IMG/VR virus record: IMGVR_UViG_3300049793_000366
Location: 372,001-436,000 of that record
Length of the DNA stretch: 64,000 bases
Reading direction: 5' to 3' (one strand)
Notes under the pieces: generated by a model
Database searches by the model: none
Seen by the model: the letters and a program-made list of their open reading frames with translations, nothing else
What the model was told of the DNA's origin: nothing
Part shown: piece by piece, positions 19,691 to 61,350 of the stretch
How the letters are laid out: every line of letters starts with the position of its first letter
How positions within the stretch are numbered: the first letter of the stretch is position 1
Translations under genes and position numbers: made by a program

Positions 19691-19714
19691 AAATAACTAT
19701 TTCAAATAATATCG

Positions 19715-19749
19715 AAAACCCTCAGTTAGCAATGACTGAGGGTTTTTTT
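19715..19749 (+). terminator. Attenuator terminator before the Asp/Pro tRNA-proS operon
   Basis: aaaaccctcagt/actgagggtttt + T tract; leader tgctggctg can pair with cagttagca. Confidence 0.8.
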
Positions 19750-19759
19750 ATGCCTAAAC

Positions 19760-21999: not shown

Positions 22000-22022
22000 A
22001 ATGTAATTAGTTCCAAATTTCG

Positions 22023-22057
22023 AAAACCCGTTAATCTGTGTGATTAACGGGTTTTTT
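22023..22057 (+). terminator. Attenuator terminator of the Gln operon
   Basis: aaaacccgttaatc/gattaacgggtttt + T tract; leader gattgac pairs with gttaatc. Confidence 0.85.
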
Positions 22058-22070
22058 GTTTGCCTAAAAT

Positions 22071-34132: not shown

Positions 34133-34603
34133 ATGAAATCTGATTTATTGAAAACAATAGATGAAACATACCTGTTAACATATTTTGGTAGCAGAGTTTT
34201 AGTCGCTACATTCTGTGGTCTTGTAATAGGCTGGGAGCGTGAGTTAAAGAGTAAAATAGCAGGCATTAGAACAAATGTACTTGTTTGTGTTGGTGCTTGT
34301 TTAATGACCAGTATGTCCTTTCTGGTAGCTGATTACTACACAGACTTAGATCCAATGAGAGTAGTTGGTCAAATCGTCACTGGTGTTGGTTTTCTTGGCG
34401 CTGGTGTAATCTTCAAATCAAATGATAACAAAGTCACTGGTGTAACGACTGCCGCCTTTATATGGGTAATGTGTGCGCTTGGGATATTATCTGGTTGTGG
34501 GTTTGTTTTACTACCAATAATATTAACAGTGGGTTTATTAGTGATATCGTTTATCTTCAAGCATCTTGAAGACAGAATTGATAAGTATAAGAAAGAAAAC
34601 TAA
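34133..34603 (+). CDS. MgtC/SapB family membrane protein
   Basis: GLVIGWERE...AGIRTN.LV, QIVTGVGFLGAGVI, G.TTAA.IW. Confidence 0.9.
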   Translation: MKSDLLKTIDETYLLTYFGSRVLVATFCGLVIGWERELKSKIAGIRTNVLVCVGACLMTSMSFLVADYYTDLDPMRVVGQIVTGVGFLGAGVIFKSNDNKVTGVTTAAFIWVMCALGILSGCGFVLLPIILTVGLLVISFIFKHLEDRIDKYKKEN

Positions 34604-35361: not shown

Positions 35362-35383
35362 AGAATTTAAATCACAATACTCG

Positions 35384-35416
35384 AAGCTCGAACCGTAAAA
35401 AGTTCGAGCTTTTTTT
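35384..35416 (+). terminator. Attenuator terminator
   Basis: aagctcgaac/gttcgagctt + T tract; leader tggttcgtgct pairs with agctcgaaccg. Confidence 0.82.
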
Positions 35417-35441
35417 GTGCCTAAATTTTAAAAATTTATAT

Positions 35442-35514
35442 GGTGATTATCGTCCAATGGTTAGGACATACGTTTGTGAAGCGTAGGATATGGGTTCGAG
35501 TCCCATTAGTCACA
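35442..35514 (+). tRNA. tRNA-His(GUG)
   Basis: G-1, GTGATTA/TAGTCAC, TACGT-TTGTGAA-GCGTA; A73 rather than C73. Confidence 0.85.
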
Positions 35515-35697: not shown

Positions 35698-35771
35698 TGA
35701 GGGGTAGCTCAGTGGTAAGAGCGCCGGGACGGAAAACCCGGAGGTCGTTGGTTCGAATCTAACCCCCTCTA
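35698..35771 (+). tRNA. Initiator-like tRNA body with an 8-nt anticodon loop ACGGAAAA
   Basis: U1-U72 mismatch, GAGGGG/CCCCTC, CCGGG/CCCGG stem, AGGTC variable loop. Confidence 0.6.
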
Positions 35772-35779
35772 CAAAGAAT

Positions 35780-36131: not shown

Positions 36132-36698
36132 ATGAAACGCATTTTATATATGAAAGAGGAAATATTAAAACTAAGGAGCGAAGGCAAAACATTCAATGAG
36201 ATTAAAACAATATTGAACTGTTCAAAATCTACAATATCATATTATTGTAGTGATGGACAAAAAGAAAAAACTATAAAAAGAACAAAAAAAAGAAGAGAAA
36301 ATTTAATACTTAGTAAACTTGAAAAATTCAAAAGCAGAAAAATAAAAAATACTAAAGAATCTGTTAGAAAATTTCAAAAAAGAGATAATGATATAAAGAA
36401 GAGAGGTAAAGTAAATAACAATTTAAATACTACATTTAGCTGGACTGACGTTATTGAAAAATTTGGTGAAAATACTAATTGTTATTTATCTGGTGAGAAA
36501 ATAAATTTATATGAAAAAGGTTATAGCTTTGACCATATAATACCAGTAAGCTTGGGTGGAGATAATAGCTTAGATAACCTTGGTGTATCAAACGAAAAGG
36601 TTAATAGAATGAAAACTGATATGATACCAGATGAATTTATAAACTGGTGTAGAAAAATATTAGAATTCAATGGATATAAAGTTGAAAAATTCAATTAA
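36132..36698 (+). mobile_element. Free-standing HNH homing endonuclease with N-terminal HTH
   Basis: CYLSGE...SFDHIIPVSLGGDNSLDNL...N.MK; inserted in a tRNA array. Confidence 0.82.
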
Positions 36699-36699
36699 A

Positions 36700-36738
36700 A
36701 TGAAAACAATGAAAACTGAAATAAAACGAAAACGATAG
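36700..36738 (+). CDS. Lys-rich mini-ORF MKTMKTEIKRKR
   Basis: ATG..TAG directly abutting a hairpin before tRNA-Lys. Confidence 0.5.
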   Translation: MKTMKTEIKRKR

Positions 36739-36767
36739 TTCCGTAGTTGAATGCTACGGACGAATAT

Positions 36768-36840
36768 AATTCCGTAGCTCAATTGGTGGAGCGTCTGACT
36801 TTTAATCAGAAGGTTGTGGGTTCAAGTCCCATCGGGATTA
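36768..36840 (+). tRNA. tRNA-Lys(UUU)
   Basis: AATTCCG/CGGGATT, TCTGA-CTTTTAA-TCAGA. Confidence 0.9.
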
Positions 36841-36870
36841 CAAAAAAATAAAATATTAAAAATAAAAACG

Positions 36871-36903
36871 ATGAAAACTATAAAACGAAAATATAAACGG
36901 TAA
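36871..36903 (+). CDS. Lys-rich mini-ORF MKTIKRKYKR
   Basis: ATG..TAA directly abutting a hairpin before tRNA-Lys. Confidence 0.5.
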   Translation: MKTIKRKYKR

Positions 36904-36937
36904 GACGTGGTTCGCCTTGAGCTACGTCACCGAAAAT

Positions 36938-37012
36938 GACTCTGTAGCTTAATGGCGAAGCACTCGGCTTTTAACCGAGGGATTGTGGGTTCGAGTCCCA
37001 CCAGGGTCACCA
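36938..37012 (+). tRNA. tRNA-Lys(UUU), CCA encoded
   Basis: GACTCTG/CAGGGTC, CTCGG-CTTTTAA-CCGAG. Confidence 0.92.
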
Positions 37013-37014
37013 AA

Positions 37015-37098
37015 GCGTCTGTCGCTCAGTGGCCGAGAGCATCAGTCTTTTAAACTGAAGGAGCAATCCCATCGTTGGTTCGAATCCAACCAGACGCA
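37015..37098 (+). tRNA. tRNA-Lys(UUU) with a long variable arm (type II body)
   Basis: GCGTCTG/CAGACGC, TCAGT-CTTTTAA-ACTGA, variable arm GGA-GCAA-TCC. Confidence 0.8.
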
Positions 37099-37121
37099 CT
37101 AAACTAAAAAAGAAAGTGCAA

Positions 37122-38324
37122 ATGGAAACAGTAAATTGTAGAATACTAAACAGAAGACTTCACGGAAAGTCTGCGTTCTTAGATGTGTTAGCGAATGGTC
37201 AACATTTACAAACATATCTTAACATAAATGAAGTTGAGAACTTCACTGAGTTGACAGAATTACCAATAGGTTCTTTCATTAGAATTAACGGGGAATACTT
37301 CACAACCAGAACTGGTCACTACACGTTGAGAATAGATAATGCTCATGTATTATTTATACCTAACAGAATACTACCAGTAGTTCAAGACGATGGTGAGAAT
37401 AGATTCAATGAAGTAACAAACGTTGAATCTATTAGAAGAAGAAGATACCTTCAAACGATATTGAATGCTGAGGAAAGGCAAACATTCGTTACAAGGTCAA
37501 GAGTTATAAATACAATAAGGAATTTCTTTATACAAAGAGATTACTTAGAAGTAGAAACTCCAATCTTACAACCAGTTTACGGTGGTGCTGAAGCTACACC
37601 ATTCGTAACAAGATTCGAATCACTTGATTCAGACTTCTATCTAAGGATAGCACCTGAATTATATTTGAGAAGAATGATAATTGGTGGGTATGATAGGGTG
37701 TTTGAGATTGGTAGAAACTTTAGAAATGAAGGACTATCTAACAGACATAACCCGGAGTTTACTTTCATTGAGGTGTATACCGCATTTGAAAATTATAACT
37801 TTAGTATGGATGTAGTAACTGAATTGTTTACAGAAATATTCAATCAGTTCGGTGAAGTTGAGTATCAGGGTAACAGAATTAATTTCTCTAACATAGAGAG
37901 AAGAAGTTACACTGAGTTAGTAGCTCAACACTGTAATGTTGATACCACAACATTAACAGATAATGAATTGGTAGCGTTGTTTGAAAATGAAGTTGAAGGT
38001 AATTTAATTAACCCAACTATTGTATATGATTACCCAGCTAGTGTAAGTCCTTTAGCGCAAGTTAGAGAAGATAACCCAAGCATAGCTGAACGTTTTGAAA
38101 TATATGTTGGTGGAATGGAAATTGGAAATGCATACTCTGAGTTGAACGATGTGAATAGACACATCGAGAACATTGGAACAGAAGATGCAGACTTCGTAGA
38201 GGCACTCGAATATGGAATGCCACCTACAACAGGAATAGGACTCGGTATAGATAGAATTGTAATGATTCTTACAAACCGAGCAATAAGAGACGTTATATTC
38301 TTCCCAGCGATGAGAAGAGCATAA
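37122..38324 (+). CDS. lysS: Lysyl-tRNA synthetase class II, shortened
   Basis: YGGAEATPF, YLRIAPELYL, FRNEG..RHNPEF, RFEIYVGGMEIGNAYSELND, YGMPPTTGIGLGIDR. Confidence 0.93.
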   Translation: METVNCRILNRRLHGKSAFLDVLANGQHLQTYLNINEVENFTELTELPIGSFIRINGEYFTTRTGHYTLRIDNAHVLFIPNRILPVVQDDGENRFNEVTNVESIRRRRYLQTILNAEERQTFVTRSRVINTIRNFFIQRDYLEVETPILQPVYGGAEATPFVTRFESLDSDFYLRIAPELYLRRMIIGGYDRVFEIGRNFRNEGLSNRHNPEFTFIEVYTAFENYNFSMDVVTELFTEIFNQFGEVEYQGNRINFSNIERRSYTELVAQHCNVDTTTLTDNELVALFENEVEGNLINPTIVYDYPASVSPLAQVREDNPSIAERFEIYVGGMEIGNAYSELNDVNRHIENIGTEDADFVEALEYGMPPTTGIGLGIDRIVMILTNRAIRDVIFFPAMRRA

Positions 38325-38331
38325 CAAAGAT

Positions 38332-38413
38332 ACATTCGCTCATTGGCGTGACCAGCCGGCTCCAACCCGGTAATGCGTAAGCGTGGTTGAGGGTTCGAAT
38401 CCCTACGAGTGTA
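38332..38413 (+). tRNA. tRNA-Trp(CCA)-like with long variable arm and reduced D arm
   Basis: ACATTCG/CGAGTGT, GCCGG-CTCCAAC-CCGGT, variable arm ATGC-GTAA-GCGT. Confidence 0.6.
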
Positions 38414-38493
38414 CAAAACCCGGAAACACAGGTTCGAATCCTGGGGCTTCATTGAAAGATGCGGCATAGTATAGTGGTAGTGCGCCGGGACTT
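38414..38493 (+). other. tRNA 3' half followed by a tRNA 5' half (permuted-tRNA-like)
   Basis: AAAACCCGG-AAAC-ACAGG-TTCGAAT-CCTG first, then TA-GTAT-AGTGGTA-GTGC-G-CCGGG-ACTT. Confidence 0.4.
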
Positions 38494-38642: not shown

Positions 38643-39383
38643 ATGGAATGTAATGTGTGTAGTAAATCTTTTAAAACCGAAAGTGGTTTTAAGAGCCATA
38701 CTAAGAAGTCATGTGATAAACATATAAATAAATGTAGAAATAAAAATTGCCCAAAGTGTGGTTTTAAGATAGCAAATAAAATAGAAAGTCACATAAACAT
38801 ATGTGATGGGTCTGGACCAAGAAGATTAAAAAAAAGAAGAGAAGGTGGGCATCAGTGGGCGAAGGGTAAAACATATGAAGAGCTTTTTGGAAAAGAGAAA
38901 GCACAAGAACGTATAGAAGAGCTTAAATTAAATTATAAAGAAAACCCAATCATTATAGATGATGATGTGGAACAAGAGAGAAGGAATAAGATAAGAATAA
39001 AGATAATTGAACGCTATGCTAATGGTTGGGAATCTACTGCTGGTCGATGTAAGAAGATTTCATATTTTAGTAATGTAGCAGGTAACATTAAAGTAGATGG
39101 TACTTGGGAATTATCAGTAGCAAAATACTTAGATAGCTTAGGTGTAAATTGGATTAGAAATAAAAAACGATTTAAATATTTCAACTCTATTAAAAATAGA
39201 ACATCAACTTATTGTCCTGATTTTTATGTAGAAGAATGGGGTTGTTTTATAGAAGTGAAGGGATATAAAACAGAACTCGATGATATAAAATGGGCAAACT
39301 TTAAAGACAAATTGGAAATTTGGGATAAAGATAAGTTAACGAGTTTAGGAATAGATATAAGATATAAAAAGAAAAGAGTATGA
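38643..39383 (+). mobile_element. Putative homing endonuclease, PD-(D/E)xK type with zinc-finger N-terminus
   Basis: YCPDFYV..WGCFIEVKGY; KGKTYEELFG repeat-like segment. Confidence 0.72.
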
Positions 39384-40102
39384 AAAAGTATTTAATAGGA
39401 ATTCAACCAACAGGAAAGATACATATTGGTAATTATCTTGGTTGCTTGAAGAAAGGGCTTGAGTTACAAGAGAAAGGTAACGATGTAACTTTTCTTATAG
39501 CTAACTATCATTCACTAACGACTGATAGCTATACTGATGAAACTGAGAAGGAATTGGTAAGACTTGGTTGTAAAAATGTGAAAAGACAAACACCTGAGTA
39601 CACTGAATTGTTTTTCAAACTATGTTGTAATATGAACTTAGGTACTCTTACTAAGATGCCTCAGTACAAAGACAAGAAAGAAACAGCTAAGTATGACATG
39701 GGTATATTACTATATCCAGTTCTTATGACGGCAGATATTATGATGAATGATCCTGACGTTGTAATTGTTGGTAAAGACCAAGTACCACATTTAGAATTGT
39801 GTAATGATATTTCTAAAAGAGTAGGTGGTAGAGAATATGCTTATGAGTTTGGTGATGTAGATAAGATTATGTCACTATCAGATCCAACTAAGAAGATGTC
39901 AAAATCTTTGGGTGATAATCATGTGATGTATGTATTCGATGATGATTACGAAAAGAAAATGAAGAAAGCCAATGCTAATGAAGATGGCTTAAATAATCTT
40001 AGAAAAATAGCTACGTGCCTTGATTTACCAGTAGATTCATACATAATGAACATTGATTTGAAAATGGCAATTGCTGATAAAATGAAAAAATTATTTAATT
40101 AA
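39380..40102 (+). CDS. trpS: Tryptophanyl-tRNA synthetase, 240 aa
   Basis: GIQPTGKIHIGNYLG, YPVLMTADI, VGKDQVPHLE, KMSKS. Confidence 0.92.
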   Translation: MKKYLIGIQPTGKIHIGNYLGCLKKGLELQEKGNDVTFLIANYHSLTTDSYTDETEKELVRLGCKNVKRQTPEYTELFFKLCCNMNLGTLTKMPQYKDKKETAKYDMGILLYPVLMTADIMMNDPDVVIVGKDQVPHLELCNDISKRVGGREYAYEFGDVDKIMSLSDPTKKMSKSLGDNHVMYVFDDDYEKKMKKANANEDGLNNLRKIATCLDLPVDSYIMNIDLKMAIADKMKKLFN

Positions 40103-40219: not shown

Positions 40220-40246
40220 GATTGTATTGTCTAATAAATAATACTT

Positions 40247-40278
40247 AACCCTTGGACTTCACTGTTCAAGGGTTTTTT
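40247..40278 (+). terminator. Attenuator terminator
   Basis: aacccttgga/ttcaagggtt + T tract; leader-end ggtctgag pairs with cttggact. Confidence 0.8.
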
Positions 40279-40292
40279 GTTATGTGTAAATT

Positions 40293-47532: not shown

Positions 47533-47558
47533 TGATATAAACATACTTAACAAATTCG

Positions 47559-47590
47559 AAACCCAGTCATTCAAATGACTGGGTTTTTTT
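47559..47590 (+). terminator. Attenuator terminator
   Basis: aaacccagtcatt/aatgactgggttt + T tract; leader tgaatggcttggttt (47498-47512) pairs with aaacccagtcattca. Confidence 0.85.
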
Positions 47591-47600
47591 ATGCCTTAAT

Positions 47601-59986: not shown

Positions 59987-60060
59987 GGCGCAATCGTCTA
60001 CCGGAAGGACGCTACCCCATTTCAGGGTAGAAACGTATGGTTCGAATCCTGCTTGCGCTA
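59987..60060 (+). tRNA. Glu-like tRNA-like RNA with 6-bp anticodon stem and bulged T stem
   Basis: GGCGCAA/TTGCGCT; CTACCC-CATTTCA-GGGTAG; GTA[T]GG/CCTGC. Confidence 0.6.
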
Positions 60061-60069
60061 CAATGTGCC

Positions 60070-60518: not shown

Positions 60519-61272
60519 TTGGGCAGTATAGTGTCCTACACAAATCTTCGGGTTTGTGTGAAAATAAAGCTGGTAACAGTCTATAAAGCAAACGTAGAGT
60601 TTGCGACTTCTTCACGGGAGTTTAACTATAAAATACTTAGTATGTCTTTGATGGACGAATGTTCAATGAGATATCATCATCCAACTATGGTGATTGCGTC
60701 AGAAATGATTACAAGAAAGGTAGGGTATTATGTGCGAAATGTCCAAACATTAGTGCGTGTGCTATCTGATTAAGTTATACAACGTATAGTTTATATTCGC
60801 AAGGGTATTTATTATACATGGGCGACTGAAGCAGACGTGAGCTGGAAACTCACAGAAGGGCGTTTAGTATTTTGTTCTCAAAAGGAACGAAGCTATACCA
60901 CACAGGCGTCCTTCATACAAATAGTTGTTATCTAACATGATTTTGAAATATCAAAAAAGCAAAATCTGTGTGGCGCTGGAGTCGAAAGGTCTCTAATTCC
61001 ATCCGTTGCGAAACGAAGATGGAGTCTAATATCCCGCAAGGATATGGATTTAGCTAAGAAAAATCTAGTGGGCGCAACCCTTAGTCAGTTCGCAAGACTG
61101 AATAGACAGAGTAGCAGTTGAGTAGACAAACTGGTCAAACAGTTCTAGCGATACGAGTGATTACCGTAAGGAATCGAGACTGACAGAATACTTATCGCAA
61201 GGTGAGTGGATAATGAGAGAACCAATAATGCTCAGAAAGATTTGTCGACCAAAGCTATAATCTCAAGCTTTT
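60519..61272 (+). ncRNA. Large ornate ncRNA, GOLLD-like (about 750 nt)
   Basis: Five CGCAA-loop hairpins, UUCG/GCGA/GAAA loops, long-range helices (GAAGGGCG/CGTCCTTC, CACACAG/CTGTGTG); tRNA-flanked phage context; family call is from memory. Confidence 0.6.
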
Positions 61273-61276
61273 TTAC

Positions 61277-61350
61277 GGCGTGTTCGTCTATCGGAAGGAC
61301 GCTACCCCATTTCAGGGTAGAAACGTATGGTTCGAATCCTGCACACGCTA
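61277..61350 (+). tRNA. Glu-like tRNA-like RNA, near copy of 59987-60060
   Basis: Identical from GGAAGGAC through the T arm; acceptor GGCGTGT/ACACGCT co-varies. Confidence 0.6.

What the first reader, a model, noticed from the sequence alone, without database searches (positions are those of the whole stretch)
36700..37012. Two Lys-rich mini-ORF + hairpin modules that could control tRNA-Lys folding rather than termination
Seen twice with the same layout. MKTMKTEIKRKR* (36700-36738) and MKTIKRKYKR* (36871-36903) end directly at a hairpin (tccgtag/ctacgga; gacgtgg/ctacgtc) with no U tract, followed by tRNA-Lys(UUU). In both, the hairpin 3' strand is also complementary to the tRNA 5' end (gctacgga 36753-36760 with tccgtagc 36771-36778; gagctac 36919-36925 with gtagctt 36944-36950). 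All Lys codons are AAA. Inference: a ribosome reaching the stop masks the hairpin 5' strand, so the 3' strand invades and misfolds the tRNA. Stalling on AAA lets the hairpin form and the tRNA mature. That would be a translation-coupled tRNA-maturation switch.
Basis: partly seen in the sequence, partly recalled or inferred. Interest (0 to 1): 0.78.

Follow-up and report, generated by a model that had tools for sequence, protein, structure and literature searches.

The report
Leader-peptide switch gating phage tRNA-Lys
Huge bacteriophages place a tiny lysine-rich coding sequence and a hairpin in front of their lysine tRNA, arranged so that a translating ribosome could decide whether the tRNA folds correctly; this would be a way of controlling a tRNA that has not been described before.

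Summary
The window lies in a 508-kb phage genome. Both modules are as described: a mini-ORF, a hairpin that starts at the stop codon and has no U tract, then tRNA-Lys(UUU).

I found the same module in about 40 distinct sequences from other huge-phage and metagenome contigs, always before a tRNA-Lys(UUU). The ORF (consensus MKTKxKYKR*) looks coding: Lys sits at codons 2, 4, 6 and 8, Arg uses five synonymous codons, and the frame is always intact. The hairpin base lies within 2 nt of the stop in 34 of 34 leaders, although 20 different stems are used.

The hairpin loop and 3' strand are complementary to nt 1-18 of the module's own tRNA, and this co-varies (0 of 20,000 permutations reach the observed value). 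In equilibrium folding, masking 4 or more nt after the stop drops the acceptor-stem probability from a median of 0.94 to 0.00. Non-cognate leaders (0.52) and shuffled leaders (0.72) do not do this.

The layout is that of an attenuator (1:2, 2:3, 3:4) whose "3:4" helix is the tRNA itself. Translation, the direction of control and the effect on maturation are all inferred. I found no natural precedent.

The parts
36132..36698 (+). HNH endonuclease gene (188 aa) inserted between tRNA-Phe and module 1. It is not part of the switch. Its stop codon lies 1 nt before the first ATG of mini-ORF 1.
   Evidence: Pfam HNH_4 4.4e-09. A close relative's contig departs from the window upstream of 36711 and reads a tRNA-like 3' end there instead. 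No other module has an HNH gene in front of it.
36700..36738 (+). Mini-ORF 1, MKTMKTEIKRKR*. The conserved core starts at the second ATG, 36709. It has five AAA Lys codons.
   Evidence: It is homologous to the family consensus MKTKxKYKR*. A close strain reads MKKKTEIKRKR*, still in frame.
36740..36760 (+). Hairpin P1 of module 1: region 1 = 36740-36747, loop 36748-36752, region 2 = 36753-36760. It starts 1 nt after the stop.
   Evidence: RNAfold -11.6 kcal/mol, z -3.7. In a close strain 36753 G>A turns a G.U pair into A-U.
36744..36785 (+). Alternative helix P2 of module 1: leader 36744-36760 pairs with tRNA nt 4-18 (36771-36785). P2 excludes both P1 and the acceptor and D stems.
   Evidence: RNAduplex -18.0, z -4.9. 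It is the MFE of the whole precursor.
36768..36841 (+). tRNA-Lys(UUU) number 1 (regions 3 and 4 of the switch).
   Evidence: ARAGORN; Rfam tRNA 72.1 bits.
36871..36903 (+). Mini-ORF 2, MKTIKRKYKR*, with four AAA Lys codons.
   Evidence: A close strain has TAT>CGT (Tyr to Arg) with the frame kept, and all its indels lie in the UTR 36843-36858.
36898..36932 (+). Hairpin P1 of module 2: core 36904-36913 / 36919-36928 (10 bp). An outer 4 bp (36898-36901 / 36929-36932) overlaps the last sense codon and the stop.
   Evidence: RNAfold -15.1 (core) and -19.3 (with the outer stem), z -4.3.
36915..36955 (+). Alternative helix P2 of module 2: leader 36915-36928 pairs with tRNA nt 1-3 and 7-15.
   Evidence: RNAduplex -15.1. 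With the ORF plus 8 nt masked, the MFE switches from P1 plus cloverleaf (-45.8) to P2 (-38.1), with an estimated barrier of about 22 kcal/mol.
36938..37012 (+). tRNA-Lys(UUU) number 2, with an encoded CCA.
   Evidence: ARAGORN and Rfam 70.6 bits. A close strain shows a compensatory acceptor-stem change, 36943 T>C with 37003 A>G.
37015..37099 (+). tRNA-Lys(UUU) number 3. It has no module of its own and begins 2 nt after number 2.
37116..38324 (+). Lysyl-tRNA synthetase homologue, directly downstream of the three tRNA-Lys genes.
   Evidence: Pfam tRNA-synt_2 1.6e-75. Best NCBIfam match is lysine--tRNA ligase, 421.7 bits, which is below the curated cut-off of 468.

Best explanation
Each module is a ribosome-operated RNA switch built like a leader-peptide attenuator, except that the final helix is the tRNA itself. 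There are four regions. Region 1 is the hairpin 5' strand, which starts at the stop codon of a 9-12-codon ORF with Lys at every second codon. Region 2 is the hairpin loop and 3' strand. Region 3 is tRNA-Lys nt 1-18 (acceptor 5' strand and D arm). Region 4 is the rest of the tRNA. Region 2 can pair either with region 1 (hairpin P1) or with region 3 (P2). When P1 forms, the tRNA folds. When P2 forms, the acceptor and D stems cannot form.

Shown here: the ORF, the P1 position and the P2 complementarity are conserved and co-vary, and the two states are nearly isoenergetic in silico.

Inferred: a ribosome that decodes the Lys codons and reaches the stop unwinds region 1 while the polymerase is making the tRNA. 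Region 2 then captures the nascent tRNA 5' half, and the precursor is trapped in a form that RNase P cannot process. A ribosome stalled at hungry Lys codons upstream, or the absence of a ribosome, leaves P1 closed and the tRNA matures. The result would be negative feedback of tRNA-Lys(UUU) output on Lys decoding capacity.
For: 1. Conservation.
- The same ORF-hairpin-tRNA-Lys(UUU) layout occurs in LR745206.1 and LR756502.1, which were found only through tRNA-array similarity.
- Pattern scans gave 35 distinct sequences in all, counting those two and the window's own two modules.
- All 7 viral loci retrieved by the tRNA 5' sequence alone carry it.

2. Coding signature.
- With codon 9 left free in the scan, all 9 tRNA-linked hits had Arg (CGA, CGG, CGC or AGA) and a TAA or TAG stop.
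- Over the whole set, Arg uses five codons, Thr uses ACT/ACA, codon 5 is hypervariable, Lys at codons 2, 6 and 8 is nearly invariant, and where codon 4 is not Lys codon 5 usually is.
- A close strain keeps both frames, and its indels lie only in the UTR.
- The genome's own genes lack Shine-Dalgarno sites and have A-rich starts like the mini-ORF.

3. Geometry.
- The hairpin base lies -2 to +2 nt from the stop in 34 of 34 leaders, with 20 different outer stems.

4. P2 co-variation.
- Cognate duplex energy is -13.9 against -9.8 +/- 0.66 kcal/mol for permuted pairings; 0 of 20,000 permutations reach it.
- On a plain MAFFT alignment, 84.8% of cells pair against 76.6 +/- 1.2 for shuffles, and 5 of 6 pairs show double changes. 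Slid registers reach 52% at most.
- Both P1 and P2 are stronger on the + strand RNA than on the - strand (p about 1e-4).

5. Switch behaviour.
- Acceptor-stem probability has a median of 0.94 when unmasked or with a ribosome stalled upstream. It falls to 0.00 once 4 or more nt after the stop are masked.
- The same mask gives 0.52 for non-cognate leaders and 0.72 for shuffled tails.
- The estimated refolding barrier is 17-22 kcal/mol.

6. Specificity.
- Among 412 tRNAs in all fetched loci, only tRNA-Lys(UUU) has a mini-ORF rich in its own codons: 40 copies with one, 34 later copies without, and 0 of 21 tRNA-Lys(CUU).
Against: - There is no RNA, ribosome or processing data; no RNA run was listed.
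- Equilibrium folding ignores tRNA tertiary structure, modification and kinetics.
- For module 1 and a few relatives, P2 is predicted even without a mask.
- A terminating ribosome normally leaves quickly. The outer part of P1 is not used in P2 and could re-nucleate the hairpin.
- A stall at the last Lys codon (codon 8) would put the ribosome edge at the P1 base, close to the flipping threshold of 2-4 nt. The sign of the response is therefore not fixed by geometry.
- Conservation of Tyr7 and Thr3 is not explained by a pure Lys-codon sensor.
- Most instances were found with patterns that impose MKT...K-R-stop, and many are related, so the counts overstate independence.
Confidence: 0.55

Rival explanations
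1. The architecture is the same, but the purpose is processing or folding assistance rather than Lys sensing. P2 would be a transient helix that holds the tRNA 5' half, or creates a double-strand-specific nuclease site, until the array transcript is cut. Translation of the ORF would simply open P1 constitutively.
For: P1 and P2 are conserved and mutually exclusive. The module sits inside polycistronic tRNA arrays, about 20 nt after the preceding tRNA.
Against: It does not explain why Lys codons at positions 2, 4, 6 and 8 are the most conserved feature of the ORF, nor why only tRNA-Lys(UUU) among 412 tRNAs has the module.
Confidence: 0.15
2. It is a transcription attenuator. P1 would be a pause or termination signal for the host or a phage RNA polymerase, possibly factor-dependent. 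P2 would be the antiterminator. Together they would control read-through into the tRNA-Lys genes and, in this window, LysRS.
For: The 1:2 / 2:3 topology and the Lys-rich leader match the trp, his and pheST leaders. Three tRNA-Lys genes and a LysRS homologue follow in the window.
Against: None of 34 hairpins is followed by a U tract, and no + strand terminator was called. The antiterminator would destroy the fold of the first product. With this geometry, Lys hunger would favour P1 and so termination, which is the wrong sign for homeostasis. In other genomes LysRS lies elsewhere.
Confidence: 0.12
3. The mini-ORF encodes a small basic peptide that has a function of its own, for example acting on the ribosome or on RNA. 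The hairpin would be an mRNA-stabilising or processing element.
For: There is amino-acid-level conservation, with synonymous Arg and Thr codons.
Against: The peptide has only 9 residues. Residue 5 is hypervariable, residue 3 varies T/S/K, residue 9 varies R/L/P, and Tyr7 becomes Arg in a close strain. This idea does not explain the co-varying complementarity to the tRNA or the exclusive link to tRNA-Lys(UUU).
Confidence: 0.05
4. There is no function. On this view the hairpins are decayed partial duplications of the tRNA 5' end, or DNA palindromes (operator, recombination or homing site), and the ORFs are chance products of A-rich spacer.
For: The hairpin 5' strand plus loop resembles the tRNA 5' end (family D2). 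The genome is AT-rich. An HNH homing-type gene sits next to module 1.
Against: Intact ORFs in about 40 distinct sequences have a fixed stop-to-hairpin distance but 20 different stems. Complementarity tracks each tRNA. G.U pairs make both helices strand-specific at the RNA level. The HNH gene is absent from every other instance, including a close strain. No tRNA model matches the hairpins.
Confidence: 0.03

Closest known systems
Ribosome-mediated transcription attenuators (trpL, hisL, and especially pheM of the pheST operon, where a leader peptide controls an aminoacyl-tRNA synthetase). Cited from established knowledge.
   Same: There is a short leader ORF enriched in codons of the sensed amino acid, followed by overlapping alternative helices 1:2, 2:3 and 3:4. 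Ribosome position selects among them.
   Different: Here 3:4 is not a U-tract terminator but the acceptor and D stems of a tRNA. The ORF ends at the base of region 1 rather than inside it. The product is the tRNA that reads the sensed codons. No terminator is present (0 of 34).
Translational attenuation of ermC and cat leaders. Cited from established knowledge.
   Same: A ribosome on a short leader ORF masks segment 1 of a four-segment structure. Segment 2 then re-pairs with segment 3, which changes the state of segment 4.
   Different: In ermC the freed element is a ribosome-binding site and the stall depends on a drug. Here the disrupted element is a tRNA cloverleaf and no downstream start codon is involved.
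Synthetic RNase P riboswitch (Nucleic Acids Res 2021, PMC7897497).
   Same: A structured 5' leader decides whether a pre-tRNA is a substrate for 5' maturation. This shows that the principle works in E. coli.
   Different: That system is engineered, ligand-driven (theophylline aptamer) and sequesters the single-stranded leader. The phage element is natural, apparently ribosome-driven and sequesters tRNA nt 1-18.
T-box riboswitches.
   Same: They are cis-RNA elements linking tRNA status to expression of translation-supply genes.
   Different: T-boxes bind tRNA in trans through a specifier codon, lack an ORF, and control protein genes. No T-box model matches the window.
Phage tRNA-Lys genes as counter-defence against tRNA-Lys anticodon nucleases (PrrC; PARIS with phage T5 tRNA-Lys). 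Cited from memory, not tested here.
   Same: A phage supplies its own tRNA-Lys(UUU), the tRNA species those nucleases attack.
   Different: No regulatory leader has been described for those tRNAs. The link to defence is only a hypothesis for why Lys in particular is sensed.

Membership tests
Leader-peptide transcription attenuator (trp/his/pheST type) | Short leader ORF enriched in codons of the regulatory amino acid | tested here: met
   ORFs have 9-12 codons with 4-5 Lys. Lys at codons 2, 4, 6 and 8 is the most conserved feature.
Leader-peptide transcription attenuator (trp/his/pheST type) | Mutually exclusive helices selected by ribosome position | tested here: met
   P1, P2 and the tRNA stems overlap. 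Masking 4 or more nt after the stop flips the predicted fold. This is in silico only.
Leader-peptide transcription attenuator (trp/his/pheST type) | Final helix is an intrinsic terminator (G+C stem plus U tract) | tested here: not met
   None of 34 leaders has 5 or more T in the 9 nt after P1. No + strand terminator was called at either hairpin.
Leader-peptide transcription attenuator (trp/his/pheST type) | Controls downstream protein-coding biosynthetic or synthetase genes | tested here: not met
   A tRNA gene follows 4-26 nt after the hairpin in every case. LysRS is adjacent only in this window.
Translational attenuation (ermC/cat type) | The alternative structure sequesters the ribosome-binding site or start codon of a downstream ORF | tested here: not met
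   No ORF starts in or after the structure; the sequestered segment is tRNA nt 1-18.
T-box riboswitch | Match to the T-box covariance model (specifier loop, T-box antiterminator) | tested here: not met
   Rfam at gathering threshold finds only tRNAs and GOLLD in the window.
Intrinsic terminator of the upstream HNH gene | Stem-loop followed by a U tract on the transcribed strand | tested here: not met
   The hairpin is present in relatives that have no upstream gene.
tRNA pseudogene or remnant | Recognisable tRNA architecture or a tRNA model match over the hairpin | tested here: not met
   Neither ARAGORN nor Rfam calls a tRNA at 36739-36767 or 36898-36937. There is only a 12-of-14 nt similarity of the hairpin 5' half to the tRNA 5' end.
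Leader-controlled RNase P processing (principle of the synthetic RNase P riboswitch) | Leader conformation changes the rate of RNase P cleavage of the pre-tRNA | not testable with these tools
   This needs an RNase P assay. Only the loss of the acceptor stem is predicted.

The most novel reading that the evidence does not exclude
This would be a natural autoregulatory circuit in which a tRNA measures its own decoding activity. Ribosomes reading Lys codons in a leader peptide on the pre-tRNA transcript would decide, through strand exchange with the tRNA's own 5' half, whether that tRNA-Lys(UUU) folds and matures. Huge phages could use it to release their own tRNA-Lys when host tRNA-Lys is scarce or has been cleaved by anticodon-nuclease defences.
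Probability: 0.4. Interest if true: 0.92.

Novelty: new variant of a known kind. Interest (0 to 1): 0.85.

Why it matters
tRNA genes are generally treated as constitutively processed products. Regulated tRNA supply is known mainly at the level of transcription or degradation.

A leader peptide that gates the folding of the very tRNA that reads its codons would add a third output to ribosome-mediated attenuation, after terminators and ribosome-binding sites. It would also be the first natural counterpart of engineered RNase P riboswitches. It would show that huge phages do not merely carry tRNA arrays but tune individual tRNAs to translational demand.

The element is compact (about 75 nt), modular and apparently portable to any tRNA by changing region 2. 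That makes it directly testable and potentially useful for controlling suppressor tRNAs. If it responds to tRNA-Lys depletion, it also bears on the arms race between phages and tRNA-Lys-cleaving defence systems.

Tried and rejected
- Close protein relatives of the LysRS homologue in viral contigs gave no loci, so I used DNA patterns instead.
- Promoter reading of the conserved TATAAA inside the ORF: rejected. The promoter scan is at chance level (17 found against 14.2 expected). The module lies inside tRNA arrays. The variation follows codon logic.
- Minus-strand terminator at 36760-36740 reported by the scan: rejected. It is a by-product of the A-rich ORF on the + strand, and no converging gene exists there.
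- Repeat of the ORF motif elsewhere in the window: none beyond the two modules.
- Cellular genomes: both pattern matches in 185,579 species genomes were chance hits with no tRNA-Lys nearby.
- Cultured phages: in the phage record collection, only the uncultured LR745206.1 matched beyond the tRNA itself. No isolate is therefore available.
- Analogous modules for other amino acids: one chance-level Leu hit among 317 non-Lys tRNAs.
- Broad set of phage tRNA-Lys(UUU) genes with a similar D arm: 20 of 22 distinct leaders lack the module and serve as background, with duplex energies of -3.7 to -13.6.
- RNA evidence: no RNA run was listed. DNA contigs gave only strain variation.
- Literature: four searches found no natural precedent.

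Full report
CONTEXT. The window is bases 372001-436000 of a 507,910-bp virus record, estimated 97% complete. The record has 32-37% G+C and 61 tRNA genes, 39 of them in the window. It also encodes aminoacyl-tRNA synthetase homologues and a GOLLD RNA. The nearest records are the uncultured 634-kb and 642-kb phages LR745206.1 and LR756502.1. The huge-phage survey reports that its five genomes of more than 634 kb all fall in the Mahaphage clade and are predicted to infect Bacteroidetes (PMC7162821); these two records match that size range, but I did not check their identity against the paper. The region of the finding reads: tRNA-Phe, an HNH endonuclease gene (36132-36698), module 1 with tRNA-Lys(UUU), module 2 with tRNA-Lys(UUU), a third tRNA-Lys(UUU), and a LysRS homologue at 37116-38324.

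THE OBSERVATION.
- The hairpins are somewhat longer than stated: 8 bp at 36740-36747/36753-36760, and 10 bp at 36904-36913/36919-36928 with a 4-bp outer extension that overlaps the stop.
- The complementarity to the tRNA is also longer than stated. It runs through the D arm, giving 15 pairs for module 1 and 12 for module 2.
- Against shuffles of each leader, the duplexes have z = -4.9 and -2.9, and the hairpins z = -3.7 and -4.3.
- Among the 28 tRNAs of this genome that have leaders of 35 nt or more, these two have by far the strongest leader:tRNA complementarity: -18.0 and -15.1 kcal/mol, with the next at -10.4.
- The two modules are tandem paralogues. Their differences are informative all the same: two hairpin pairs changed on both sides, and the ORFs differ by indels of 3 and 6 nt.

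RELATIVES. The two uncultured phages were found only through their tRNA arrays. Both carry the same arrangement before their first tRNA-Lys(UUU): MKTKLKYKR* plus an 11-bp hairpin in one, MKTKRKYKR* plus a different hairpin in the other.
- Pattern scans of viral and metagenome contigs, filtered with ARAGORN, brought the total (with those two loci and the window's own modules) to 35 distinct sequences, all before tRNA-Lys(UUU). Several lie on contigs of 385-640 kb.
- Those patterns impose part of the peptide, so I added two retrievals that ignore the ORF.
- In the first, all 7 viral loci holding one particular tRNA 5' sequence have an intact mini-ORF with an abutting hairpin. New variants there are MKSKRKYKR*, MKSKLKYKR* and MKKKLKYKL*.
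- In the second, a broad set of phage tRNA-Lys(UUU) genes showed that the module is lineage-restricted: 2 of 22 distinct leaders carry it.
- No true instance occurs in 185,579 species genomes.

IS THE ORF CODING?
- In the scan where codon 9 and part of the stop were left free, all nine tRNA-linked hits had Arg, using four different codons including AGA, and a TAA or TAG stop.
- Over the whole set, Arg uses five codons and Thr uses ACT/ACA. Codon 5 is hypervariable. Lys at 2, 6 and 8 is nearly invariant, and where codon 4 is not Lys codon 5 usually is. AAG occurs as well as AAA.
- A close strain seen in other metagenomes keeps both frames. Its indels lie only in the UTR 36843-36858, a two-base change turns Tyr7 of ORF 2 into Arg, and a G.U pair in hairpin 1 becomes A-U.
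- The absence of a Shine-Dalgarno site is not an argument against translation. Only 4.6% of the genome's 241 long ORFs have one, against 5.6% of random windows. Their upstream regions are A-rich like that of the mini-ORF, as expected for Bacteroidota-type initiation (established knowledge).

THE RNA ARCHITECTURE.
- The hairpin base lies -2 to +2 nt from the end of the stop codon in 34 of 34 distinct leaders, although 20 different outer stem sequences are used. The tRNA follows 4-26 nt later. None has a U tract.
- The hairpin loop and 3' strand pair with nt 1-18 of the module's own tRNA. The cognate mean is -13.9 kcal/mol against -9.8 +/- 0.66 when tRNAs are permuted among 18 distinct 5' ends; 0 of 20,000 permutations reach it.
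- On an unfitted MAFFT alignment, the six core pairs (tRNA nt 4-9) are paired in 84.8% of cells against 76.6 +/- 1.2 for shuffles. Five of the six pairs show changes on both sides. Slid registers reach 52% at most.
- Examples of co-variation: TCCGTA with TACGGA, CTCGTA with TACGAG, CCCGTA with TACGGG, and GTAACTC with GAGTTAC.
- Both helices are more stable as + strand RNA than as the - strand (28 of 35 and 26 of 35 cases, p about 1e-4). This argues for RNA pairing with G.U rather than a DNA palindrome.

SWITCH BEHAVIOUR IN SILICO.
- For 34 precursors, the median acceptor-stem probability is 0.94 with no constraint or with a ribosome stalled upstream. It is 0.88 when masking stops at the stop codon, 0.12 at +2 nt, and 0.00 from +4 nt onward. 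Between 28 and 31 of the 34 are below 0.2 in that range.
- With the same mask, non-cognate leaders give 0.52 and shuffled tails give 0.72.
- Where the two states differ, the estimated direct-path barrier from the P2 state back to hairpin plus cloverleaf is 17-22 kcal/mol. A co-transcriptionally formed P2 could therefore persist.
- These are equilibrium or heuristic calculations. They ignore tRNA tertiary contacts.

MECHANISM. The layout is that of an attenuator, 1:2 / 2:3 / 3:4, with the tRNA as 3:4.
- A ribosome that decodes the alternating Lys codons and reaches the stop opens region 1 while the tRNA 5' half emerges. Region 2 captures that half, and the precursor cannot acquire the acceptor and D stems that RNase P needs.
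- A ribosome held at hungry Lys codons, most often the first ones, far from P1, leaves the hairpin closed and the tRNA matures. So does the absence of a ribosome.
- The result would be negative feedback on tRNA-Lys(UUU). AAA is the second most used codon of this phage at 5.3%.
- P1 could also act as a pause hairpin that synchronises polymerase and ribosome, as in the trp leader. That is inference.
- Weak points: how long the ribosome dwells at the stop, the ambiguous geometry of a stall at codon 8, and the unexplained conservation of Tyr7.

RIVALS. I considered four alternatives: a processing or chaperone role without Lys sensing; factor-dependent transcription attenuation; a functional peptide; and non-functional remnants or DNA palindromes. 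The Rival explanations section weighs each in turn. The last is effectively excluded by the comparative data.

COMPARISON WITH KNOWN SYSTEMS.
- The element works like leader-peptide attenuation and ermC-type strand exchange. It fails the defining features of both, having neither a terminator nor a sequestered start site.
- It is not a T-box.
- Its output resembles the engineered RNase P riboswitch (PMC7897497).
- Four literature searches found no natural case of a leader peptide or cis leader controlling tRNA folding.
- I classify it as a new variant of ribosome-mediated attenuation with a new kind of output.

VERDICT.
The structure and its conservation are shown; function and direction are inferred.
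- Interest is 0.85.

Noticed in passing
window 60855-61269 (+), with a tRNA-like match at 61277-61350: A full-length GOLLD RNA (Rfam RF02032, 232 bits, model positions 1-416) is followed 8 nt later by a tRNA that only Rfam calls. A tRNA-Lys(UUU) without a module lies upstream at 59987-60061.
   Followed up: no
window 19704-19759, 22013-22070, 35383-35442, 47545-47600 (variant near 40240-40292): A strong hairpin, a run of 6-7 T and then (A/G)T(T)TGCCT(A/T)AA occur four times in the 508-kb genome, always on the + strand and always just before a tRNA cluster. This may be a terminator plus promoter or start signal for the tRNA transcription units. The unit starting near 35420 would include both Lys modules.
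   Followed up: partly
G000:C1:121630-121702 (outside the window): There is a suppressor-type tRNA with anticodon CUA, which ARAGORN labels Pyl. TAG ends 11 of 23 distinct 9-codon mini-ORF sequences (module 1 among them) but only 17 of 241 long ORFs. Part of the reason is that the G of TAG is the first hairpin pair. TAG read-through would carry ribosomes into the hairpin.
   Followed up: no
window 35698-35772: ARAGORN reports a tRNA with a four-base anticodon (GGAA) and an 8-nt loop. Rfam scores it 53.6 bits. It could be a frameshift-type tRNA or a miscalled loop.
   Followed up: no
window 36132-36698 and 38643-39383: An HNH endonuclease gene and a zinc-finger ORF are interspersed in the tRNA array. 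The HNH gene is absent at this junction in a close strain, as expected for a mobile homing-type gene. Its stop is 1 nt before the first ATG of mini-ORF 1, so termination-reinitiation is possible in this genome only.
   Followed up: partly
window 38354-38493; also G000:C1:320238-320331 and 320758-320926: Spacers between annotated tRNAs contain T-arm-like motifs (GGTTCGAATCC and similar) that no tool calls as tRNA. They may be decayed, split or intron-bearing tRNA genes.
   Followed up: no
window 39380-40102 and 34133-34603: There is a short (240 aa) class I Trp/Tyr-type synthetase homologue and an MgtC-family protein next to the tRNA clusters.
   Followed up: no
L272 (IMGVR_UViG_3300036770_006325, 37 kb): A minimal version of the module, MKRKR* plus a hairpin complementary to the tRNA 5' end (duplex -16.1), sits on a much smaller contig. 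The element may therefore not be confined to huge genomes.
   Followed up: no
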